A DNA stretch of 64,000 nt. Source: Anolis carolinensis (lineage: Eukaryota). Under the pieces are notes generated by a model. The model saw only the letters and a list, made by a program, of their open reading frames with translations. It ran no database searches and was not told the origin of the DNA. The stretch is taken from assembly GCF_035594765.1 (NCBI RefSeq), contig NW_026943824.1, forward strand, positions 3,305,666 through 3,369,665, in the 5' to 3' direction. Both the position numbers and the translations under genes were made by a program. Below, piece after piece: positions 5,518 through 41,600 of the stretch; position 1 is the first letter of the stretch; each line of letters starts with the position of its first letter.

Positions 5518-6189
5518 GTTTATTTGTATCCCACCACCATCTCAAGGCGGCTCACAGAAATATCAAATGCAAAACAATAACAATATACAATACATCAATA
5601 AACAATAATAATAAACAGCTCAGCAGTTTAACCCGCTGCACCATCAGGGACTCCCTGTTTAGAGTCCCTGATGGTGCAGCGGGTTAAACTGCTGAGCTGC
5701 TGAACTTGCTAACCGAAAAGTTGGCAGTTCGAATCCGGGGAACGGAGTAAGCCCCCGCTGTTAGCCCCAGCTTCTGCCAACCTAGCAGTTTGAAAACATG
5801 CAAATGTGAGTAGATCGATAGGTACTGCTTCTGTGGGATGGTAACAGTGCTCCATGCAGTCATGCTGGCCACATGACCTAGGAGGGGTCTACGGACAGCG
5901 CTGGCTCTTTAGCTCTCTCCTGATGTTCCGCCCACATCTGTGGCAGGCATCCTCAGAGGTTGTGAGGTATGCTTATAATGTGCACTTTGCTAATCTATTA
6001 TTACAACCTCACTGTTTTTAAATTCTATGTTTTTAATAAGTGTGTTTTTATTCTTTTTGGTTAATGTGCAAATATTACAACTGGTGCATATTATTGTTTA
6101 TTGATGTATTGATGTATTGTATATTGTTATTGTTTTGCATTTGATATTTCTGTGAGCCGCCTTAGGATGGTGGTGGGATACAAATAAAC

Positions 6190-6238
<49 letters not shown>

Positions 6239-6357
6239 TATGCTGGAAACTAGAAACACCTCCCAACATCCTTTGTTTGCTGCCCCTGGTTCTCATATCT
6301 GGAACTCTGAAAATAGAGAAGTTCCAGACATGGGAACCAGGGGCAGCTAACGACTCT
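5354..6357. repeat. Long inverted duplication (arms about 5354-5610 and 6090-6357)
   Basis: Near-identical reverse-complement arms that include a (TAA)n tract. Confidence 0.85.
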
Positions 6358-6484
6358 GAACAAAGGATGCCCCCAGGCAGGAAGAAGCCAGGATATGAAG
6401 CTATTCAATGCTGATTAAGGTGATTAACTACACATTCACACTAGCCTCCAACTGACAAGAGTTCTTCCCTCACCCTGGACTTTC

Positions 6485-6533
<49 letters not shown>

Positions 6534-7330
6534 TAGAGTCTCACTTATCCAACATAAACGGGCTGGCAGAAGCTTGGATAAGCAAATATGTTGGATAATA
6601 AGGAGGGATTAAGGAAAAGCCTATTAAACATCAAATTAGGTTATGATTTTACAAATTAAGCACCAAAACATCATGTTATACAACAAATTTGACAGAAAAA
6701 GTAGTTCAATACACAGTAATGCTATGTAGTAATAACTGTATTTACGAATTTAGCACCAAAATATCACGATATATTGAAAACATTTTTTTAATTTATGTAT
6801 TTATTTCAATTATTTATACTCTGCGCTTCTCACCCGAGGGGACTCAGGGCGGCTTACAAGTGGCAATTGATGCTGTTACACTGTTATACAATGAACTAAA
6901 GTGTTAAAACAGTTAAAACAGTCATAAAATACAATATACAAAGTTTAAAACAATGCAAAGTGCTTATGCCATTCATCCACCAGACCTTATACCTTATCAC
7001 GATATATTGAAAACATTGACTACAAAATGTGTTGGATAATCGAGAACGTTGGATAAGCGAGTGCTGGATAAATGAGACTCTACTTGTATATATATATATA
7101 TATATATACTTATCCAACATAAATGGGCTGGCAGAAGCTTGGATAAGCGAATATGTTGGATAATAAGGAGGGATTAAGGAAAAGCCTATTAAACATCAAA
7201 TTAGGTTATGATTTTACAAATTAAGCACCAAAACATCATGTTATACTAGCCTCCAACTGACAAGTTTTTCTCTCGCCCTGGACTTTCCACAGATATATAT
7301 ATAAACCTTCCTTGCTGAGTTTCTCCATAC

Positions 7331-7382
7331 CTCACAACCTCTGAGGATGCCTGCCATAGATGTGGGCGAAACGTCAGGAGAG
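7331..7382 (+). ncRNA. Minimal type I hammerhead ribozyme motif (Penelope-associated), tandem copy 1
   Basis: CCU-CUGAGGA-U-GCCUGC[CAUAGAU]GUGGGC-GAAAC-GUC-AGG; stems I and II pair; helix III is reduced to palindromic ACGU. Confidence 0.8.
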
Positions 7383-7540
7383 AATGCTTCTAGAACATGG
7401 CCATACAGTCCAGAAAATATTCAACAACCCTGATTAACTACAACGTTCACACTGGCCTCCAACTGACAAGAGTTCTTCTCTCACCCTGGACTTTCCACAG
7501 ATATATATATATAAACCTTCCTTGCTGAGTTTCTCCATAC

Positions 7541-7592
7541 CTCACAACCTCTGAGGATGCCTGCCATAGATGTGGGCGAAACGTCAGGAGAG
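7541..7592 (+). ncRNA. Minimal hammerhead ribozyme motif, tandem copy 2
   Basis: Identical core 210 bp downstream of copy 1. Confidence 0.8.
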
Positions 7593-7750
7593 AATGCTTC
7601 TGGAACATGGCCATACAGCCCAGAAAATATTCAACAACCCTGATTAACTACAACATTCACACTGGCCTCCAACTGACAAGAGTTCTTCTCTCACCCTGGA
7701 CTTTCCACAGATATATATATATAAACCTTCCTTGCTGAGTTTCTCCATAC

Positions 7751-7802
7751 CTCACAACCTCTGAGGATGCCTGCCATAGATGTGGGCGAAACGTCAGGAG
7801 AG
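7751..7802 (+). ncRNA. Minimal hammerhead ribozyme motif, tandem copy 3
   Basis: Identical core 210 bp downstream of copy 2. Confidence 0.8.
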
Positions 7803-7989
7803 AATGCTTCTGGAACATGGCCAGACAGAACGGAAAACATACAAGAACCAAGGTCAAAAGAGAAGGCCCATCTTTCCAGTTGGGAAGAAAGCGACAAGGG
7901 AGACAAAGGGGTCTGTCTGTCTCCAAGGCTCTTGTGCCAAGCTGGAGTGGGTGAGATCCCCAGAGAAATGGTCACCTCACCCACTTCCC

Positions 7990-8520
7990 CCTCCTCCTTT
8001 TCCGAGGGCGAGGCTGGCACCCACGTGGGGATCTCGGAGGGGGAAACAGGGGGGTCTAGAAGGTCCCCAGGCTCTTCCTCCAAGGCTCTTCTTACCCATT
8101 ACGCACCGCATTTTACGCACGGCTTTTTACGCACCGCTTCTCCGGCTCCGCCCGCCTCTCCTGCTGCTTCTCCGGCCTCGTCGAGGGATGCTCGGGTCCT
8201 CCCGCAACCGAGGCCCCTCCCGGGCCCCGGCCAGCCCCACGGCTCCTCCCCCGTCTCGCGAGAAAGACCCACCACCGAAGGAGGAGGAGGAGGAGGAAGG
8301 CTGCAGAGGAGGCTGAGCTCTCCAAATGCTCCGCCCGCCGCCTTCCAAGAGGGGAGAGGCCCACAGACACCCTTTTCCCTCGGCTAGGAGTTCGGATTTG
8401 GGGGCCACCGAATCGGAGAGACTCCAAGAGTCGAATCCCTTGCTCCAGGAAGGATTTCCAGCTCCAAAGGGGTGCAGGGGATGCAAACCGCATCAGAGGA
8501 TGCAAACCCATGCAGGGGAT
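7990..8520 (-). promoter_or_regulatory. Orphan CpG island; probable promoter and non-coding first exon of a minus-strand gene (CHST12 expected by synteny)
   Basis: CpG-dense; strong minus-strand donor TGG|GTAAGA at 8094-8095; gene identity inferred only from vertebrate gene order. Confidence 0.5.
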
Positions 8521-10744: not shown

Positions 10745-11918
10745 TAAGAGTTGGAAGAGCCCACATGTGCCATCTAGTCCAACCTCCTGCCATCCAGGGA
10801 AAGCACTTTTGGGAAATGGAGAGCTCCTAATTGCTTGTTCAGAATATTTCCAAATACTTTCCATTACAACAGTCTATTATTGTTGGAGTAGGGGTGAGGA
10901 AAGCCATGTCTCCTGTGAATTAAAGATTGCAGGGGGATCTTGGGTGAGACGGCAGACGATGTTGTCTTTGCTTCTAAATCCAGATGTCTGATTGCTCCAG
11001 CCCTGTCAGCCTTGGCTTCCCTCCACCATCGGAAACCTCTCCTCCTCACCAGACCCACCCAAGGCTGGAAATGTCAACTTGTTGACGTTTCTCCTCTTCT
11101 TCCAGACTCCTTGTGACTTGCGCCTTTGCAAGAATGTCTTGACAATTTGTACATCTCGAAGAACATAAACTTCGGGCTCAGAGCACTGACTTGGACATTT
11201 GAACTCCAGTAACCGGAGCCAGGTGCAAACGGGTGGCGAGAACGAAGGAACAAGGGTGCCTCTCAGTACAAACTCGGCCTGTGTCCGTTTTCAGAAGCTG
11301 TGCCATGTTGAACTCACACTTCTTTCAATCTCACAGATACATTATTTCAGTTTCCTAATGGAAATCTGGAAGGATCTCTCTGTTGCTGCTGTTGTGGATA
11401 CACAGTTGGACCTCAGCAATGCTCAGTGATCTTCCACTACTTTAGCCCACTCTGTTGTAAATGCGGCATTTTAATCCGACCCGGAGGAGCCAAGAGTGTT
11501 TGGAGTCTCTCCATCTGGGATGAAGGACTCCTCTGTTCGGCTTCATTCACCGAGTCCTCCATTCACCCTGCCATGTTCCAGAAAGTGTTCTTTCCCCGCT
11601 CTCCTAGTCCCCAGCCTCCTGGGTAAACTCAATCCCTCTTCTGTGACTTCCTTCGATCACTTTCATGCTTCAGATACTTCCTGACCAAATCCCCTCCTGG
11701 TTGGTTGTCTCGTTCCTCCTCTCATATCCAGTTGGCACAACTCTCTGATGCAAGTGGAGTTTCCCACTGAAATCTATGGCTTCGCATTGATTTGGCATTG
11801 GGTGGTGTTTGTGGTGTGGAGATAAGTGTTCTTCTATGTGTTGTCGAAGGCTTTCATGGCCGGGATCACAGGGTTGTTGTATGTCTTTCGGGCTGTGTGG
11901 CCATGTTCCAGAAGTATT

Positions 11919-11970
11919 CTCTCCTGACGTTTCGCCCACATCTATGGCAGGCATCCTCAGAGGTTGTGAG
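11919..11970 (-). ncRNA. Minimal hammerhead ribozyme motif in inverted Penelope pLTR
   Basis: Reverse complement carries the intact CUGAGGA...GAAACGUC-AGG core. Confidence 0.72.
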
Positions 11971-12421
11971 GTATGGATAAACTAAGTAAGGAAAGGAAAG
12001 AATATATATATCTGTGTATATATATGTGGCAAGAGTCCTTTGTCACTGGGAGCCAGCATTAATGTTTCAGTTAATCACCCTAATTAGCATTGGAAATGTT
12101 TTGTCAGACTACACAGAGAAGCCATTGAAATCCACAAGCATGTGGACAACTTCAACAGAAAGGAAGAAACCATGAAAATGAACAAAATCTGGCTACAAGT
12201 ATTTAGAAAACTCCAAAATCAAAACAGTAGATGGGAACCAACACTCTGAGGGCTTGACTGAACAAAGGATGCCCCCAGGCAAGAGACAAAACATTTCCAA
12301 TGCTAATTAGGGTGATTAACTGAAACATTAATGCTGGCTCCCAGTGACAAAGGACTCTTGCCGCACCCAGGACTCTACACAGATATATATTCTTTCCTTT
12401 CCTTACTTAGTTTATCCACAC

Positions 12422-12473
12422 CTCACAACCTCTGAGGATGCCTGCCATAGATGTGGGCGAAACGTCAGGAGAG
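12422..12473 (+). ncRNA. Minimal hammerhead ribozyme motif in Penelope pLTR
   Basis: Intact core and stems. Confidence 0.72.
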
Positions 12474-14354
12474 AATACTTCTGGAACATGGCCACACAGC
12501 CCGAAAGACATACAACAACCCAGTATTCTTCTAGTTTGGAAACATTGGTCAACTCGGGAATAAACAGCTCAGTCTCAAAATCATAAGCATATTGTCTATT
12601 TGCAAAACAAACATCATAGAAGAAAGAGCGGTTTGTCTGTTGCTGTTTGGAAGACAATGAGGCGTGTTTCCTCTTTGACTTGTCTCCAAACGTCCTCATT
12701 GAAAACATTCACAGCACTTGGCAAGCCAAGATTGCAAAACTCTAGGGAAATATCCGAAATGGGTTTCGAACTGTTTTTAATGCTACAGTGTAGATGCATC
12801 CTTAAGGCCACTAAGACAACCAAGCACAAACGTGGCAGCCCCACTCCAAATTCCTTCTCCACCCTTGCGTTTGGGTTGCTCTTCCAACAATCTGATCCCA
12901 GGTAATGTGCTTTGAAGTGGATTATATGAGTCTCCACTGCCATATAATCTGGGATAAGCAGATAACCTGGGATCAGATCCTGGGATATAAGGACAGTGTA
13001 GAAGGGGCATCAGAAAAGCCATTTCTCGGAGACCACAGCACCCTCTCGTGGCCACAAAGCACACATTAGAGAACAGATCACACATCCAAAGAGACTAAAG
13101 ATGTGTCCACAGTGTAGAATTAATGCAGCCTGACACCACTTTAACTGTCATGGCTCAGTGTTAAAAATTCATGGCAGTTGTAGCTTGGCAAGGCACCAGG
13201 GCTTTTGGGTAAAGGAAGCTAGTTTTTGCAAAACAAACTCCTATGTGTTGTTTTGAAGGCTTTCACGGCCAGAATCACTGGGTTGCTGTGTGTCTGGAAC
13301 ATGGACATACAGCCCAGAAAACTCACAGCAACCCAAAAACTACCATTATCCTATAGCATTGAGCCATGGGAGGAATCCTACATTTTAAATGCACCTTTAG
13401 AATCATAACATTGAAAGAGGTCTCCAGAAACCATCCAGCCCAACCTCCTGCTGGGAAGGAAGAAACAATCAAAGCGCTCCCGACAGATGCCCTGCTTAAA
13501 ACTCCATCTGGAGCAGCATAATAGCAGTGTTGGCCACTACTGAGTCTTTCCCATAGGTCAGTTGGCTGTGCCCATCCACATCAAGCTTCTGAATGTGAGC
13601 ATTGCATGACTCATCTCCATCTCTTAGCACATTTCTCTCTCGCGCTCCCTCTTCACACCCATTCAATCGGCACAAAATAGCTTTCTACTCCATCGCCTGC
13701 GGAGACCACTTGATATAGCCAGCTGGCATTTTCCAATGACCTTAATGAAAGAAAGTGTGAGGCCAAGAGCCAAAAAAAGATGCGCAAATCGGAGCCATCG
13801 GGCACAGCTTTCCAGCAGAGAGAATCTCATCTGCGCACCGAGGATAGAATTGAATGAAGAATATATCAAATGAGGTGAAGCAAAGTAGTAGCAGTACAAG
13901 TCTGTTAACCTGGCATACAATTGGGTCCTCACATTTTTCATATTTAACTCTTCCCTGATTGGATATATTTCTGGAGAGAATATATCACTGAGGATGGTTG
14001 CCATAAATGTGGGCAAAATATCAGGAGAGAATGTGTCTGGAACATGGCCATAAACTCACAGCAACCCAGTATTTAATTGTTTTTAAGTTTTGTATTTGCC
14101 ATTTTTAAATTAATTGGGTTATGTCATGTTATTGTAAACCAACCTTGGTGGAAAGGTGGGGTAGAAATAACTTAATTGATAAATAGATACGGGTCTTGTA
14201 AAGGAAAATACCACATGAGGCTACAGATAATTTGTGGGTCCCTAGTGACTTATGTTTGAGGCACATAGAGTACAGATTCAAACGGATGCAAAATCTGACA
14301 GGCAACATCAAACCAAGGCATTTCAATGTTTCAAATGACACCCAAGACCGCTTC

Positions 14355-28099: not shown

Positions 28100-28360
28100 G
28101 ACCTCACAACCTCCGAGGATGCCTGCCATAGATGTGGGTGAAACGTCAGGAGAGAATACTTCTAGAACATGGCCATACAGCCCGGAAAACATGCAACAAC
28201 CCTGTAATCCCGGCCATGAAAGCCTTCGACAACACACCCACATGCTTAGTTTCCAAGACCTCACAACCTGTGAAGATGCCTGCCATAGATGTGGGCAAAA
28301 CATCAGGAGAGAATGCTGCTGGAACATGGTCAGACAGCCCAGAAAACTCACAGCAAACCA
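28100..28360 (+). mobile_element. Two degenerate Penelope pLTR copies fused to an RTE 3' tip (28063-28106, minus strand)
   Basis: Hammerhead cores mutated (CCGAGGA; GTGAAGA...CAAAA); adjacent sequence matches the reverse complement of the RTE tail at about 61980-62020. Confidence 0.65.
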
Positions 28361-35617: not shown

Positions 35618-38600
35618 ATGTAGACTTCTACATCTGCATACATTCTAACTGTGTTGGGATATATGCCAAATGGTTGAGCAGCTGAGCAAGTGATGCCTCA
35701 CAGAAATACCTTATGACTAAACTAAGCTTTTCCTTTAATTGTGTGTGTAAAACGCATATACAGTATCTTGCTTTTAATATTCTTGTGGTTCTGTATGCGT
35801 GAGGGATTTATATACTCCTAACTCAGCAGAAACACATAGGCATTTTCCGTAATTTCTGTAATATTTTAACAACCTTTCTGTTGCTGATTGGTTATCTAAT
35901 GAAACCATGCCTTGGATGAACCATGCACCAGAAGAACTGAAGCGATAGATAAGATACCATGCTTTAAAAAAAACCTCACAGATTTCAATAGGATCTGGTT
36001 CTCATTTTTTCTTTTGGAAGACACAAATTCATAACAGATGGGAGCGTGTTGCAGAAGAATTGAACTGTGAAAACGAGTCTTAGAGTGTGTAAATAACAAC
36101 TAGAGTTAAAACAAATATATTGTATTGGATTTCCTTCATGTGAGAAATGGTCTTTCGGTTGGAAGATCTGTCTTTGAAATAGGCGTGTGGTGTGAAATCC
36201 TATTTTCCTGGCAGTACCCAAAGGCAGGTGTTTTTGATCCATAGTCTGCTAACTGCTCTCTGTCAGTTTAAGAATAGCAGTAACAACAATGGATGGCTGT
36301 GACTCTGTGAGTTTTCTGGGCTGTATGGTCATGTTCCAGAAGCATTCTCTCCTGACGTTTCATCCACATGTGGGGAAACCATCAGGAGAGAATGCTTCTG
36401 GAACATGGCCACACAGCCCAGAAATCTCACTCAACCCAGGGATTCTGGCTATGAAAGCCTTCGACAACACAGTAATAACAATCTCAGAAATAATAGTACA
36501 GTAGTCTAATTTATCCCAAGACTCGCTTATCCAAGGTTCTGGATTATCCAAGTCATTTTTGTAGTCAATGTTTTCAATATATCACAATATTTTGGTGCTA
36601 AATTTGTAAATACAGTAGAGTCTCACTTATCCAACATAAACGGGCTGGCAGAATGTTGGATAAGCGAATATGTTGGATGATAAGGAGGCATTAAGGAAAA
36701 GCCTATTAAACATCAAATTAGGTTATGATTTTACAAATGAAGCACCAAAACATCATGTTAGACAACAAATTTGGCAGAAAAAGTAGTTCAATACGCAGTA
36801 ATGCTATGTAGTAATTAATGTATTTATGAATTTAGCACCAAAATATCATGATATATTGAAAACCTTGACTACAAAAATGTGTTGGATAATCCAGAACGTT
36901 GGATAAGCGAGTGTTGGATAAGTGAGACTCTACAGTCATTACAACATAACATTACTGCGTATTGAACTACTTTTTCTGTCAAATTTGTTTTATAACGATG
37001 TTTGGGTGCTTATTTTGTAAAATCATAACCTCATTTGATGTTTAATAGGCTTTTCTTTAATCCCTCCTTATTATCCAAGATATTTGCTTATCTAAGGTTC
37101 TGCCCGCCCGTTTAGCTTAGATCAGTGAAACTCTACTGTAATTGTGACCTGTGCATAATCCATACACAGCATAATATTCTGCTGATATGTGGTGTAGAGA
37201 AGCTATATGTTACAACATGCATGATATTAAAAACACGTGATTTTAAGAATAAGGGGAAGTTGTCACTATCCATAGCAGAGTGGGTGTTTTTTCTCTCTTT
37301 CTTGGTAGATTTTAGATTGTGGAACTGATGGAGAAACACCAGAATTGGGAGGCAGATAGGCAATGAAGACTTCTGTTTTTTGACATTTGACTGTCATTAT
37401 ATTCAGTTTTTTTAATGTCGATTGTGGATTTTCCCCATTTTTTTCTTTCTCAATTGCTTGATTACATTGTGATGTTTATTACGGTATCCTTCCTTGAGAA
37501 TGTTACTCCTAAAAGGCTGGTTTGCGGCTGTTTTAATTGAAGGGTATAGATTGTGCTTCCATCCCCATGAGGGAAGTGGATTTAGTCGAGGAGGAAGTTG
37601 AGAGCAGCACTTTGTTAAATTATTCTCCATGTAGTTAAACATGATTAGTGGGGAACTTCTGATGTTGTCTTAATTGAAGTCCTCTTGGCCTAACATTTCT
37701 GGGTTTCACGTTTGATGAAGTGAAACATCTGCTTGACAGAAACAGTTTAAAATCTTCTAGTTACACATAGAGGTAAAATAATAGTTCTTTTCCTTCCACA
37801 GTTGTTGTTATCGGATCCGAAAATGCCGAATCAGGGATTTACTCAAATTCTTCTCATAGTGGAAGCAAGCTATGCAGGAAATACAGGACTCTTGGCTGGC
37901 TTACAGTGTAGAATTGTTGGCATCTGTCCTGATTGAGAAGAGCAGCCAGTTTTTTAGCTCGTAGGTGTGAATATAGATGTTCCTGATGTTATCGGGAGGA
38001 AGGTCACGACGTCTCTTCATTTTGGGCACGTCTCATTAGGAAGAAGTGACTCTCTGGGTGTTTCTGCTTTCACTGCAAGTCCTCAAGGAACAACTTTGTG
38101 TTTCCAGGACTGTGGTTTTTAGCAGCAGCAGCAGCAGCAACATTTTCTCTGGCATTTTATTTTATTTTTTCTTCTCCTCCCCTAGACTTGGCAAAGCCTC
38201 CGATAAGTGACGTAAAAGAACCAGACGATCCTCTGATGCAGGCACCCCCGGGAAATCCGCTACTTCTTTCTCACACCTTGCAAGAGCTCTTGAGCAAGGA
38301 CACGGTGCAGGTAGAGCTGATCCCGGAGAAAAAGGGTCTCTTTGTCAAGCATGTGGAGTATGAGGTTTCAAGCAAGGTAATGCCGCTTGCTGGTAAGCAG
38401 AGGGAATCTCTTTCTTGAACTGCTTTTCCTGGACTGATTTTCTTTAGGACAGTTGCTTGATTGAAAATCTTGAGCATAGCCAGACTGACGGAAGAGATGA
38501 GTCCAGAACATCTCAGATTTATTTTTGCCTTTTTGCCTCATAGGAATGGCAACTGGTCTTGGATGTTTGTATTGTGAGTTCACATAAAATGCCCACTCTG

Positions 38601-41600
38601 AGATAGTCCTAGGAATGGGATGATGCTTGGGTTGCTGTGAGTTTTCTGGGGTGTCTGGCCATGTTCCAGAAGCATTTTCTCCTGATGTTTTGCCCACATC
38701 TATGGCAGGCATCCTCAGAGGTTGTGAGGTCTGTTGGAAACTAGGCAAGTGCGGTTTATACATCTGGAATAATGTCCAGGGTGGTAGAAAGAACTCTTGT
38801 CTGTTGGAGGCAAGTGTGAATGTTGTAATTGGCTGGCTTGATTAGTATTGAATTGCCTTGCAGCTTCAAAGCCTGGTTGTTTCCTGCCTGGGGGAATCCT
38901 TTGATGGGAGGTGTTAACTGGCCCTGATTGTTTCTTGTCTGGAATTCCCTTGTCTTCTGGGTGTTGTTCTTTATTTACTGTCCTGATTTCAGATTTTTTT
39001 TTAATACTGGTAGCCAGATTTTGTTCATTTTCATGGTTTCTTCCTTTCTGTTGAAATTGTCCACATGCTTGTGGATTGTGGCTTCTTTGTGTAATCTGAC
39101 GTGATGGTTGTTACAGTAAATAAAGGACAACACCTCTGAGGATGCCTGCCATAGATGTGGGCGAAACGTCAGAATGCTTCTGGAATATGGCCATACAGCC
39201 CAAAAAACTACAGCACCCCAGTGATTCCAGCCATGAAAGCCTTCGACAACACGGGATGATGTTTGTTCTGCAATCTTCGGATCAAAGTAGACAATAAGAG
39301 AAATTTATATTTCCTCTAAGTAATTCACTTCTCCTCTTCAGAAGGATTTGCATCAACACATTAAACCCGTTTCACATTCCAATGACCAGTAAAAAAATCC
39401 CAAAGCATTCTTAATATGAAATGCATCGTTCAGGAAAATCAAATGCAATGACAAACAGACGTTTTTCACTACTCTAGGGAAAAAAATGCAAATTGCTTAA
39501 TCTAGTTTGACACTTTGAATTTCTCCCTTTGGCTATCAATCAGCTGGAAGTGTTTTGAAAATTTTACTGCAGCCAGTCATGCACCAAGGCGAACAAGTTG
39601 TTCTTCCACTTTGAAAAGTCCTTATGACTGTTCAGGTGCAGACAAATGACTCCAATAAAATTTTTGAAAACATGCATATGCTTGTTCCTGCTCTACCATG
39701 ACTGCTTAGGACTTGCAGCCCTTTCCATTTGTTTTACTGTTTGACTAAGTGAATGGCATTTGTTAAGCAATGATTAACTATCCTGTGTGTCAAATCATTG
39801 TTCTCAGATCTTATATTAATTTGGCCACATACAATGTTCCTTAAGTATGTACACCATTTCCACTATCTATCTCTTCCTCCTTTGTTAAAAGGAACTTACA
39901 AGATCCTGAATTTTTTTTTGGGTGTGTCAGGAGTGAGTTGAGAAACTGCAAGTTGCTTCTGGTGTGAGAGAATTGGCAGTCTGCAAGGACGTTGTCCAGG
40001 GGATGCCCGGATGTTTGATGTTTTACCATCCTGTGGGAGGCTTCTCTCATGTCTCCACATATACTGATGTGATCTAGTAATTTCATGGAGTATTTTGGAC
40101 TGGAATATTAAAAGCACACTTTAGGAAACTAGTAATGAGGTTCATTTATTAATTGAGTAGATCAGCTTAACCACATATAATGGCAGTCAAACTTCACTGT
40201 CAAAATTGTGCTCTTTGGCTGTTCTGCAAAATATACTTGTCAAGGTAGTCAACAAGTTAATATTAACTTTACCAGTACGTACTGGGAAAAGTTAATACAG
40301 TTGTATTAACTCTGGAATGGTTTGAAAAAGGATGATCAGTCACAGTGATGACCAACGGCACACTTCCAGTAAAACATAGCTAACCTTCATTCAAAAAATT
40401 GTAATGGTGATCCTGCAGAAGCACTTAGAACTTTTCTTTCATCTTTGTTGTAGCGTTTCAACTGTTCTGTGTACAGGCGGTACAATGATTTTGTGGTCTT
40501 CCATGAGATGCTTCTCCAAAAGTTCCCGTATCGGATGGTCCCTGCGCTTCCCCCCAAAAGAATGCTTGGAGGCAAGTCTTGGGCTGATGGGATTGGGATG
40601 GAGTAAGTGTGACGAAAGAGAGGTGCATAAAGATGTGGAGATTGTAAACTTGGACCTCAAGACATAGATAGAAAGGAAGGAGGCAGTGTTGGTCACTGAT
40701 TCAATATACAATTGGTAAGGGCGGAAAGCAAGCAGTGCTCAGTTTATGTTTACTTAGAAATAGAGGTGTTCCTCAATCTGTACTGTTGTTTTTTTTTTCC
40801 TACAGCTGACCGAGAGTTCATTGAGACAAGGCGGCGTGCATTAAAACGGTTTGTTAACTTGGTGGCTCGACATCCTCCATTCTCAGAAGATGTGCTTTTG
40901 AAGCTCTTCCTCTCCTTCAGTGGATCGGTGAGTATTCGTGAAATTTGTATTTGGGATTCCAAGTATTATCTTAGATAAGAAGTGGTTAATAGGAACATCA
41001 TTTCAAGAGGGAATTGAACCTCTGTGCTGGGTTAGCTATGCAACCAAATCCAGAAGGGTCCTGATCACATGTCCCTTGATTCGTGCTAAATGTGATTACA
41101 GCTCCTTTTTGTATGACGTATTGTTTTCAGATTGCTCTATTTGTTGGGAATCACCCAGGACTACTCAAGTCTAAATGTAGTCAGATAGATGATAGAGTTA
41201 GATTGAGGGAACCCTTTCCCCGTTTCCAAAGCATGCCTAGATAGGCTTTACTGTGTTCCCCCTCTTTCTATCCTGTTTACGTCATATCCCTTACTTTGAA
41301 GTTAGTATAAATGTGAATCTTCAGGGACACTAACTTCTCATTGGTCAGAATGTTTTATGGCCTCAATAAACTGGACCATGAGGTGGGAACCATTTTGGTT
41401 CTGTCTTCTCCCTTTGTTCTTCTAACTAACAACAGCATCTTACTGTCTCTCCAGGCAAGATGTAACTATTTAGATGTTTGTTATTTTTCCTTTCTTATTT
41501 TTCCTTAGAAACTAGTCTAGAGTAGACTAGACAGCTCCCAAGCCTTTCTATCTACAATGGAGTTCTTTTTACCCGAATAAATGTTTTTTGAACTTTTATT

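What the first reader, a model, noticed from the sequence alone, without database searches (positions are those of the whole stretch)
7246..7823. Retrozyme-like array: three intact minimal hammerhead ribozymes at exact 210-nt spacing
Seen: each 210-bp unit contains CUC-ACAA-CCU | CUGAGGA | U | GCCUGC-CAUAGAU-GUGGGC | GAAAC | GUC^AGG-A-GAG. This is the hammerhead core (CUGANGA, GAAA, NUH) with a 6-bp stem II and a stem I (CCU/AGG plus CUC/GAG across an internal loop). There is one extra U after A9, and helix III is collapsed to palindromic ACGU. Known: Penelope-like elements carry such minimal type I hammerheads, which cleave as dimers by pairing the palindromic helix III between two copies. 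Tandem hammerhead repeats of this size class (newt satellite 2, metazoan non-LTR retrozymes) give monomeric linear and circular RNAs. Inference: a plus-strand transcript could fold as a double hammerhead, cleave after C7375, C7585 and C7795, and release two 210-nt monomers able to circularise and be copied by Penelope RT. That would be a lizard retrozyme/circRNA system. The class of motif is known; activity at this locus is untested.
Basis: partly seen in the sequence, partly recalled or inferred. Interest (0 to 1): 0.85.

Follow-up and report, generated by a model that had tools for sequence, protein, structure and literature searches.

The report
Tandem Penelope-element hammerhead junction repeats
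Three head-to-tail 210-bp copies of the end-piece of a very abundant lizard retrotransposon (Poseidon_Ac, a Penelope-like element) each carry that element's already published hammerhead ribozyme. The array is real but ordinary, and nothing shows that it makes circular RNAs.

Summary
Positions 7245-7849 are a 2.9-copy, 210-bp tandem repeat, and each unit has an intact minimal type-I hammerhead with predicted cuts after C7375, C7585 and C7795.

It is not a new ribozyme system. The motif and its flanks match the published Poseidon_Ac (PAc) Penelope-like element of Anolis carolinensis (Frangieh et al. 2024, PMC11167929). A9-U-G10.1 is the PAc start codon, and the cut site lies 26 nt after the ATG.

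Each unit is the PAc pseudo-LTR from TGATTAAC plus ORF nt 1-84/86. The unit junction therefore joins the published tail-less reverse-transcription start site (about +85) to the published ATT nick site in the pLTR.

At least 13 more copies lie in the window. They are ordinary 5'-truncated copies, in tandem or inverted pairs, mostly decayed at CpGs.

Several points argue against a retrozyme:
- The unit RNA is not self-paired (z +0.3 as a circle, +1.2 linear).
- The double-hammerhead fold is 9-14 kcal/mol above the minimum free energy.
- The unit lacks ORF nt 87-172, which PAc reverse transcriptase needs in vitro.
- Published RNA-seq shows no ends at the cut site.
- The ribozyme cleaves in vitro only when PAc protein is added.

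The runs I could reach were contigs only, so they gave no RNA test. The scan has noted similar arrays elsewhere in this genome, with units of 80-169 bp.

The parts
7245..7849 (+). Whole tandem array: 2.9 units of 210 bp. Each unit is the PLE pseudo-LTR plus ORF nt 1-84/86.
   Evidence: TRF; the repeat finder D1; alignment A1.
7245..7430 (+). Unit 1, incomplete at its 5' end (186 bp). It starts inside the pLTR at ACTAGCCTCC, right after a duplicated piece of another transposon.
   Evidence: It has 12 differences from unit 2; 10 of them lie in its first 48 nt.
7431..7640 (+). Unit 2, complete: TGATTAAC...pLTR...hammerhead...ORF +84.
7641..7850 (+). Unit 3, complete in length. It has 1 difference from unit 2 in the first 183 nt and 8 in the last 27 nt (7824-7850).
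7331..7382 (+). Hammerhead 1: stem I 5' strand 7331-7340, CUGAGGA 7341-7347, extra U 7348, stem II 7349-7367, GAAA 7368-7371, ACGU 7371-7374, C17 at 7375, stem I 3' strand 7376-7382. The predicted cut is after 7375.
7541..7592 (+). Hammerhead 2, with the predicted cut after 7585.
7751..7802 (+). Hammerhead 3, with the predicted cut after 7795.
7347..7433 (+). Remnant of the PLE ORF start in unit 1. The ATG is A9-U-G10.1, followed by 28 codons (MPAIDVGETSGENAS...) that end at a TGA created by the unit junction. The same remnant is in unit 2 at 7557-7643.
   Evidence: translations; compared with the Poseidon_Ac_1p translation.
7422..7441 (+). Unit-unit junction CAACAACCC-TG-ATTAACTAC (ORF +84/86 joined to the pLTR at TGATTAAC). 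It occurs again at 7632-7651 and nowhere else in the window.
   Evidence: landmarks from PMC11167929.
6313..6530 (+). Upstream PLE piece: about 108 nt of the ORF 3' end (6313-6420), the pLTR 5' part from TGATTAAC (6421-6487), and an expanded (TA)n (6488-6530). It may be the left half of unit 1's element, split by a transposon insertion (inference).
   Evidence: (D3: 94-96% to units 2/3).
6275..6351 (.). Inverted repeat (32-nt arms, 91% complementary, 13-nt spacer) at the 5' end of that PLE piece. This is the inverted adjacent copy typical of PLE insertions.
   Evidence: PLE structure described in PMC8557442.
6531..7246 (+). Unrelated TIR element sitting in the TA repeat (6531-7085; TIR CAGTAGAGTCTCACTTATCCAAC). 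It is followed by (TA)n and a 139-nt, 99% identical duplicate of its own 6543-6681 at 7108-7246, which abuts unit 1.
   Evidence: D4, I18.

Best explanation
The array is a partial-tandem insertion product of a Penelope-like retrotransposon of the Poseidon_Ac (PAc) family of anole lizards. Each 210-bp unit is the element's pseudo-LTR, from TGATTAAC about 22 nt after the ORF stop codon, plus the first 84-86 nt of its ORF. The known PAc hammerhead straddles the pLTR/ORF boundary, so its A9-U-G10.1 is the ORF start codon. Every unit ends where PAc reverse transcription starts in tail-less copies (about +85). The next unit begins at the ATT(AAC) site that the PAc endonuclease prefers to nick in its own pLTR. 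The unit junction was therefore most likely made by the element's own machinery. It could arise by homing of 5'-truncated copies into a resident pLTR, or by template switching of the reverse transcriptase from the pLTR start back to the initiation site. Copy number may later have changed by unequal exchange. These steps are inference. What is shown is the anatomy, the match to the published element, and the coincidence of the junction with both published landmarks. The three hammerheads are intact because the units are young. They are expected to behave like the published PAc ribozyme: weak, dependent on a dimer or on PAc protein, and not needed for insertion. There is no evidence that the array has a function of its own.
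For: (1) Match to the published element. The Repbase Poseidon_Ac consensus printed in File S1 of PMC11167929 begins ATGCCTGCCATAGATGTGGGCGAAACGTCAGGAGAG. It ends ...TCTCCATACCTCACAACCTCTGAGG. Units 2 and 3 are identical to it, by reading, over the last 27 nt of the pLTR and the first 57 nt of the ORF. [quoted passage not shown]

(2) Junction landmarks. Units end at ...AACCC(TG), which is ORF +84/86. Fig. S2 of the paper puts the tail at about nt 85-119 and equates the tail boundaries with the RT start sites. Four dispersed tail-less copies in this window end at the same ...AACCC, and four others run on to ...GACAACAC(A) at about +118-119. The next unit starts at TG-ATTAAC. [quoted passage not shown]

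(3) The dispersed copies are ordinary PLE copies. Those that reach TGATTAAC continue upstream into the ORF 3' end (the c6421, c12313 and c58674 flanks match the consensus 3' end). Their 5' ends vary across unit positions 56-176.

(4) The local architecture fits the textbook PLE pattern. An ORF 3' end plus pLTR 5' part lies 800 bp upstream (6313-6530), with an inverted adjacent copy.

(5) The same genome holds on the order of 1e5-1e6 copies of the hammerhead segment. Summed word depth is about 1.2e7, against 16 on the unique flank in run X2. The window has about 13 copies in 64 kb.

(6) Scan notes list other arrays of this motif in the same genome with units of 80, 135, 152, 155 and 169 bp (unchecked). 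Recurrent by-products would vary in unit length like this, whereas one replicating RNA species would have a fixed size.
Against: No target-site duplication or clean pre-insertion site could be found. The left end abuts a duplicated fragment of another transposon, and the right end runs into GC-rich unique DNA. The two ends of the array are much more diverged than the interior: the first 48 nt of unit 1 and the last 27 nt of unit 3. A single simple insertion event does not predict that. The order of events (homing, template switching, later unequal crossing-over) is not resolved. I had no raw RNA reads, so transcription and processing of this locus are untested.
Confidence: 0.85

Rival explanations
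1. An active non-LTR retrozyme. The array is transcribed, the hammerheads pair as double hammerheads and release 210-nt monomers, and these are circularised and copied by a Penelope reverse transcriptase, possibly by rolling circle. That would explain the tandem form.
For: Three intact hammerheads lie at exact 210-nt spacing, within the retrozyme size class of 170-400 nt (PMC7229834). A 2026 preprint finds tandem hammerhead repeats in 4 of 5 reptile genomes and derives them from PLE pLTRs. Rolling-circle copying with internal initiation at +85 would give exactly this junction. An 89-nt contig in run X1 bridges the unit junction, but the run's RNA label is only a guess.
Against: The hammerhead is the minimal PLE variant, not the canonical type I with loop-loop contacts that defines metazoan retrozymes. 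The unit RNA is not self-paired: z is +1.16 linear and +0.30 circular, with 47% of bases paired. The double-hammerhead fold scores -19.9 kcal/mol, against -33.6 for the dimer minimum free energy and -28.8 for two monomers. Published PAc data show cleavage only with PAc protein, no RNA-seq reads starting or ending at the cut site, and a template requirement for ORF nt 1-172, of which the unit keeps only 1-86. No dispersed copy in the window is permuted at the cleavage site, and all continue into the ORF 3' end. The junction string occurs only inside this array in the 64 kb. Intactness of the three motifs is expected from youth alone. Units 2 and 3 differ at 3 of 210 positions when phased on the cut sites, so the chance of no hit in a 55-nt motif is about 0.4.
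Confidence: 0.07
2. A purely local DNA duplication. Replication slippage or unequal crossing-over acted on one solo PLE end-piece, with no role for the PLE machinery in making the junction.
For: Units are 98.6-100% alike in the interior. The immediate neighbourhood holds another recent local duplication, 139 nt at 99% identity with 565-bp spacing (D4). Ends that are more diverged than the interior would fit homogenisation between repeats.
Against: A random duplication would have arbitrary breakpoints. Here one breakpoint is the natural 3' end of tail-less copies (+84/86) and the other is the ATT nick site at the start of the pLTR. A solo copy ending at +84 and starting exactly at TGATTAAC would be needed first. 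Growth from 2 to 3 units by unequal exchange is still quite possible and is included in the main explanation.
Confidence: 0.06
3. An assembly artefact: the triplication is a mis-assembly of a very high-copy repeat.
For: PLE tandem and inverted structures are known to trouble assemblies (PMC8557442). The k=31 contigs I could lay cannot resolve a 210-bp repeat.
Against: The units are not identical: unit 1 carries private indels and substitutions, and unit 3 has a private 3' end. Contigs from two independent runs (X2, X3) span the right-hand junction from about 7800 into 600 bp of unique flank.
Confidence: 0.02

Closest known systems
Poseidon_Ac (PAc) Penelope-like element of Anolis carolinensis and its hammerhead (Frangieh et al. 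2024, Mob DNA 15:12, PMC11167929; Repbase entry by Arkhipova 2006)
   Same: Same hammerhead sequence and same position across the pLTR/ORF boundary, with ATG = A9-U-G10.1 and the cut 26 nt after the ATG. Same first 57 nt of the ORF and last 27 nt of the pLTR. Same 3' end points (+84/86 without the tail, about +119 with it). Same tendency to form tandems.
   Different: The units lack the 2.5-kb RT/GIY-YIG ORF (nt 87-2541) and the first 22 nt of the pLTR. The pLTR has an extra ~20-nt segment (CCTCCAACTGACAAGAGTTCTTC) and a longer (TA)n than the consensus. ORF nt 58-86 differ at about 6 positions, so it is a sister subfamily.
Minimal hammerheads of Penelope-like elements (Cervera and de la Pena 2014, PMC4209133)
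   Same: [quoted passage not shown] Occurrence in tandem or on opposite strands a few hundred bp apart is also shared. Self-cleavage in vitro is reported as low.
   Different: None in kind. That paper names turtles and snakes among reptiles, not lizards.
Metazoan non-LTR retrozymes (Cervera and de la Pena 2020, PMC7229834; Li, Clavereau and Pollet 2026 preprint, doi 10.64898/2026.07.22.740005)
   Same: Tandem repeats of 170-400 bp with one type-I hammerhead per unit, co-existing with PLEs. By the preprint's working definition (tandem repeat plus hammerhead motif; pLTR-derived; found in 4 of 5 reptiles, mean unit 176 bp) this array would be counted as one.
   Different: The 2020 retrozymes carry canonical type-I hammerheads with loop 1-loop 2 contacts and give highly self-paired circRNAs, seen on gels and by RT-PCR. 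Here the motif is the minimal PLE type, the RNA is not self-paired in silico, there are only 2.9 copies, and there is no RNA evidence.
Newt satellite 2 and Schistosoma Sm-alpha hammerhead repeats
   Same: Tandem genomic repeats with type-I hammerheads that need a double-hammerhead conformation.
   Different: Those are high-copy satellites or SINE-like families with their own transcripts and a short helix III plus loop. This is a three-unit by-product of an autonomous element.

Membership tests
Hammerhead ribozyme, type I | Conserved core boxes CUGANGA and GAAA, and an NUH cleavage triplet | tested here: met
   CUGAGGA, GAAA and GUC are present and identical in all three units.
Hammerhead ribozyme, type I | Helix II closed by G10.1-C11.1; helix I open-ended, formed by the 5' and 3' flanks | tested here: met
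   Helix II is GCCUGC/GUGGGC (6 bp, two G-U pairs) and forms in every predicted fold. One extra U lies between A9 and G10.1. Helix I is only CCU/AGG plus CUC/GAG across an internal loop.
Hammerhead ribozyme, type I | Helix III (A15.1-U16.1 plus further pairs) within one molecule | tested here: not met
   ACGU has no loop and cannot pair in cis, so it can only pair as a 4-bp intermolecular helix in a dimer. That dimer fold scores -19.9 kcal/mol against a minimum free energy of -33.6.
Hammerhead ribozyme, type I | Match to the Rfam hammerhead covariance models | tested here: not met
   No hammerhead family hit at gathering score over the window, nor at E<=10 over 7100-7950.
Hammerhead ribozyme, type I | Self-cleavage activity | not testable with these tools
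   Published for the identical PAc motif: cleavage only with PAc protein, abolished by C3G or G8C, and partly rescued by the double mutant (PMC11167929).
Penelope-like element, Poseidon_Ac family | Sequence match to the pLTR and ORF start of the family consensus | tested here: met
   Comparison by reading with the consensus. The last 27 nt of the pLTR and the first 57 nt of the ORF are identical. The rest of the pLTR is about 90% alike apart from one ~20-nt indel.
Penelope-like element, Poseidon_Ac family | [quoted passage not shown] | tested here: not met
   The array keeps only 28 codons per unit. No ORF of 150 aa or more in the window resembles it, and the four tested have no Pfam hit. Only a ~108-nt ORF 3' end lies at 6313-6420. 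The array is therefore a non-autonomous fragment of the family.
Penelope-like element, Poseidon_Ac family | Insertion signatures: 5' truncation, partial tandems forming pLTRs, an adjacent inverted copy, an optional 30-40-nt tail | tested here: met
   Variable 5' ends and fixed 3' ends at +84 or about +119. A tandem pair at 28101-28346. Inverted pairs at 11869/12313, 38629/39132 and 36307-36430. An inverted repeat at 6275-6351.
Metazoan non-LTR retrozyme (sensu Cervera and de la Pena 2020) | Short tandem units (about 170-400 bp), each with a hammerhead | tested here: met
   210 bp x 2.9 copies.
Metazoan non-LTR retrozyme (sensu Cervera and de la Pena 2020) | Canonical type-I hammerhead with loop 1-loop 2 tertiary contacts | tested here: not met
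   This is the minimal PLE variant: no closed loop 1, a long helix II, and no helix III.
Metazoan non-LTR retrozyme (sensu Cervera and de la Pena 2020) | Monomer RNA that is highly self-paired | tested here: not met
   Linear fold z = +1.16. Circular fold z = +0.30 with 47% of bases paired.
Metazoan non-LTR retrozyme (sensu Cervera and de la Pena 2020) | Monomeric linear and circular RNAs in vivo | tested here: inconclusive
   All 24 runs offered were Logan contigs, none on record as RNA. Contigs cannot show ends, and the two runs that cover the unique flank look like DNA at 16-30x. Published RNA-seq for PAc shows no ends at the cut site.

The most novel reading that the evidence does not exclude
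The ORF-less 210-nt pLTR-plus-ORF-start unit could be an incipient non-autonomous derivative of Poseidon_Ac, caught in the act of becoming a vertebrate retrozyme. It would be transcribed from the pLTR promoter, cut at the hammerheads with help from PAc protein in trans, circularised, and recopied. The many arrays of 80-210 bp noted in this genome would then be products of that pathway.
Probability: 0.07. Interest if true: 0.5.

Novelty: already known. Interest (0 to 1): 0.15.

Why it matters
As it stands this is an annotation point. A striking-looking triple ribozyme array is a routine structural by-product of a hyper-abundant lizard retrotransposon, and the ribozyme has already been published and assayed.

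Its modest value is as a clean natural example. The published in-vitro landmarks of PAc retrotransposition are the RT start at about +85 and the ATT nick in the pLTR, and they coincide with a genomic tandem junction here.

If such ORF-less units were shown to give circular RNAs, they would link autonomous PLEs directly to vertebrate retrozymes. A 2026 preprint already proposes that idea from sequence relationships.

Tried and rejected
- Rfam at gathering score on the whole window and at E<=10 on 7100-7950: no hammerhead hit, only chance-level snoRNA and miRNA matches. This does not count against the motif, because the models expect helix III.
- Sequencing runs and laying reads: all runs were contigs and none is on record as RNA. 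X2 and X3 behave like DNA. No starts, ends or strand could be seen, so expression and cleavage stay untested. Depth figures serve only as a rough copy-number indication.
- Pfam on the 206-aa ORF that starts at the third hammerhead's ATG (7767-8384) and on three other ORFs: nothing. That ORF is read-through into GC-rich flank and is not a PLE protein.
- Covariation in the hammerhead stems across the 14 copies in the window: none. All changes are CpG-type decay that breaks the core or ACGU, so the copies say nothing for or against the structure.
- Search for target-site duplications at the array ends: none recognisable.
- A first fuzzy-regex scan timed out and was replaced by BLAST.
The comparison was made by reading.
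Full report
**Observation.**
- Tandem Repeats Finder reports 7245-7849 with period 210, 2.9 copies and 95% matches. The repeat finder gives spacings of 210 and 210.
- The 35-nt string from CTGAGGA through stem II and GAAAC to GTC is exact at 7341-7375, 7551-7585 and 7761-7795. Zero matches are expected in shuffles. The predicted cuts after C7375, C7585 and C7795 and the two 210-nt monomers are arithmetically right.
- The motif has CUGAGGA, GAAA and GUC. Helix II is 6 bp (GCCUGC/GUGGGC), with one extra U between A9 and G10.1. Helix I is short and split (CCU/AGG, CUC/GAG). There is no helix III, only the palindrome ACGU.
- Rfam finds no hammerhead here at gathering score or at E<=10. This fits a motif that lacks helix III.

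**It is an interspersed repeat.** The same 35-mer, with up to 3 mismatches, occurs 7 more times in the 64 kb, on both strands. BLAST with one monomer finds about 13 further fragments.
- Phased on the cleavage site, these fragments share a fixed 3' end at monomer position 54-59 or about 35 nt further on. Their 5' ends vary (56, 61, 71, 121, 148, 164, 172...). This is the signature of 5'-truncated retrotransposition.
- The copies that reach position 56 (TGATTAAC) continue upstream into a shared sequence...AACAAAGGATGCCCCCAGGCAGGAAG...CAATGCTAATTAAGG.

**Identification.** A full-text search led to Frangieh et al. 2024 (PMC11167929). The paper characterises PAc, the Poseidon Penelope-like element (PLE) of Anolis carolinensis. 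Its File S1 prints the Repbase consensus.
- The consensus ORF begins ATGCCTGCCATAGATGTGGGCGAAACGTCAGGAGAGAATGC..., and the consensus ends ...TCTCCATACCTCACAACCTCTGAGG.
- Units 2 and 3 are identical to it, by reading, over the last 27 nt of the pseudo-LTR (pLTR) and the first 57 nt of the ORF.
[quoted passage not shown] Here ATG is 7347-7349 (A9-U-G10.1) and the cut is after 7375.
- The shared sequence upstream of the dispersed copies is the 3' end of the PAc ORF.
- The hammerhead is therefore the published PAc hammerhead, a member of the minimal PLE hammerheads of Cervera and de la Pena 2014. Those have a long helix II, a short helix I, an unpaired base 5' of stem II, dimer dependence and low activity.

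**Anatomy of the unit.** Numbering from the ATG, each unit ends at ...CAACAACCC (+84) followed by TG (+85/86). The next unit starts at (TG)ATTAAC, which in the consensus lies 22-24 nt after the stop codon.
- The unit is thus 126 nt of pLTR plus 84 nt of ORF. ORF nt 87-2541 and the first about 22 nt of the pLTR are missing.
- Both breakpoints are functional landmarks in the PAc paper. The optional tail spans about nt 85-119, and its boundaries are the two reverse-transcription start sites. [quoted passage not shown]
- In this window, four tail-less dispersed copies end at the same ...AACCC, and four others end at ...GACAACAC(A) near +118-119.
- The junction string CAACAACCCTGATTAACTAC occurs only at 7422 and 7632 in the window.
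- A random DNA duplication would not be expected to break at both landmarks. I therefore infer that the junction was made by the PLE machinery, either by homing into a resident pLTR or by template switching from the pLTR start back to the initiation site. Which of these happened, and whether unequal exchange later changed the copy number, is not resolved.

**Local context.**
- 6313-6420 is about 108 nt of PLE ORF 3' end. 6421-6487 is the pLTR 5' part from TGATTAAC, 94-96% identical to units 2 and 3. It runs into an expanded (TA)n at the position of the pLTR's own TA run.
- At 6531-7085 an unrelated element with terminal inverted repeats sits in that TA repeat. It is followed by more (TA)n and a 99% identical 139-nt duplicate of part of itself (7108-7246).
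- Unit 1 starts directly after this duplicate, at ACTAGCCTCC. The 6441 piece and unit 1 share the derived A in CTAGCC, where units 2 and 3 and the consensus have G.
- A plausible reading, which is inference only, is that unit 1 and the 6313-6530 piece were one element. The original insertion would then have been ORF 3' end followed by three pLTR/ORF-start units, later split by the DNA transposon and a small rearrangement.
- At 6275-6351 there is a 32-nt inverted repeat at the 5' end of that PLE piece.
- 5' truncation, partial tandems, an adjacent inverted copy and a tail are exactly the PLE insertion features listed by Craig et al. 2021.

**Does it work as a retrozyme?**

*Folding*
- The hammerhead-competent monomer fold scores -9.7 kcal/mol, against a minimum free energy of -14.4. 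In the minimum-energy fold the CUGA box pairs with UCAG at the cut site.
- The double-hammerhead fold, with intermolecular helices I and III, scores -19.9 kcal/mol. The dimer minimum is -33.6, and two free monomers give -28.8.
- The 210-nt monomer is no more stable than dinucleotide shuffles. z is +1.16 as a linear molecule and +0.30 as a circle, with 47% of bases paired.
- The metazoan retrozyme circRNAs of Cervera and de la Pena 2020, by contrast, are highly self-paired and carry canonical type-I hammerheads. That paper assigns the minimal variants to autonomous PLEs.

*Published experiments on the identical motif*
- There was no cleavage without PAc protein.
- C3G or G8C abolished cleavage.
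- Ribozyme mutants did not affect insertion.
- No RNA-seq reads began or ended at the cut site.
- The RNA template needed the first 172 nt of the ORF. The unit keeps only 86.

*My own read test*
- All 24 runs offered were contigs, and none is on record as RNA.
- On 7586-8400, runs X2 and X3 cover the unique flank evenly at 16-30x, so they behave like DNA.
- Contigs from both runs span the right-hand junction of the array, which confirms that end.
- The hammerhead segment has a summed depth about 1e5-1e6 times that of the flank.
- Loose ends before 7641 are mostly the canonical ORF 3' end, not the mini-unit junction. One 89-nt contig in X1 does bridge that junction.
- Nothing can be said about RNA ends.

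*Selection*
- Across the 14 motif copies in the window, every change is CpG-type decay (GGGCG to GGGCA or GGGTG; ACGTC to ACATC). There is no compensatory change.
- The three array copies are intact, but the units are young. Cut-site-phased monomers 2 and 3 differ at 3 of 210 positions, so zero hits in a 55-nt motif has a probability of about 0.4.

**Unexplained.** Divergence is concentrated at the two ends of the array. Ten of the 12 differences between units 1 and 2 lie in the first 48 nt of unit 1. Eight of the 9 differences between units 2 and 3 lie in the last 27 nt of unit 3. This may reflect homogenisation of the interior, or younger sequence laid into an older resident copy. I could not decide between these.

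**Comparison and novelty.** By the working definition of the 2026 preprint of Li, Clavereau and Pollet (tandem repeat plus hammerhead; pLTR-derived; present in 4 of 5 reptiles), the array would be counted as a non-LTR retrozyme.
- By the experimental definition of 2020 it fails two tested features, the canonical hammerhead and the self-paired RNA. The decisive feature, circRNA in vivo, is untested.
- No paper in the searched library combines 'retrozyme' with 'Anolis'.
- The scan's own notes list similar arrays in this genome with units of 80, 135, 152, 155 and 169 bp. Three were followed up and judged ordinary PLE by-products (unchecked by me). Variable unit length fits recurrent by-products better than one replicating RNA.

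**Verdict.** It is a copy of an already known element carrying an already published ribozyme, so interest is low.

Noticed in passing
window 36307-36430: Perfect head-to-head palindrome of two PLE hammerhead/ORF-start fragments (62-nt arms, 87% complementary, no spacer). It may reflect the extension of both strands reported for PAc, or snap-back synthesis.
   Followed up: partly
window 28101-28346: A second tandem pair of PLE end-pieces with about 157-nt hammerhead spacing. The first copy carries the full tail to about +119, and a 5'-truncated copy follows directly. Both cores are mutated (CCGAGGA; CTGTGAAGA with GGGCAAAACATC).
   Followed up: partly
window 11869-12016 (-) with 12313-12521 (+); 38629-38830 (-) with 39132-39207 (+): Inverted pairs of PLE end-pieces about 300 bp apart. 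The 11916(-) and 12417(+) hammerheads are fully intact, and their ORF starts are identical to the Poseidon_Ac consensus over the stretch read.
   Followed up: partly
window 6531-7085 and 7108-7246: A roughly 555-bp element with terminal inverted repeats (CAGTAGAGTCTCACTTATCCAAC...), inserted in a TA microsatellite. A 139-nt, 99% identical duplicate of its 6543-6681 follows at 565-bp spacing and ends exactly where the hammerhead array begins.
   Followed up: partly
window 7824-7850: The last 27 nt of the array differ from the other units at 8 positions, while the preceding 183 nt differ at 1. The origin of this diverged end is unexplained.
   Followed up: partly
window 7767-8387 and 7900-8500: The ATG inside the third hammerhead opens a 206-aa ORF that reads out of the array into a GC-rich island (65-67% GC at 8000-8500). 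It has no Pfam match and is probably fortuitous. The island may be a promoter or first exon of a neighbouring gene, about 100 bp from the array.
   Followed up: partly
window 7754-7809 (runs X1, X2, X3, X15): The summed k-mer depth of the hammerhead segment is about 1e5-1e6 times that of the adjacent unique DNA. This suggests several hundred thousand copies of this PLE end in the genome (about 13 per 64 kb in this window).
   Followed up: no
window 5912-5971 (-): An isolated 50-60-nt hammerhead fragment on the minus strand with a decayed core (GGGCGGAACATC). Both flanks are non-PLE sequence, and it lies about 350 bp left of the inverted repeat at 6275-6351.
   Followed up: no
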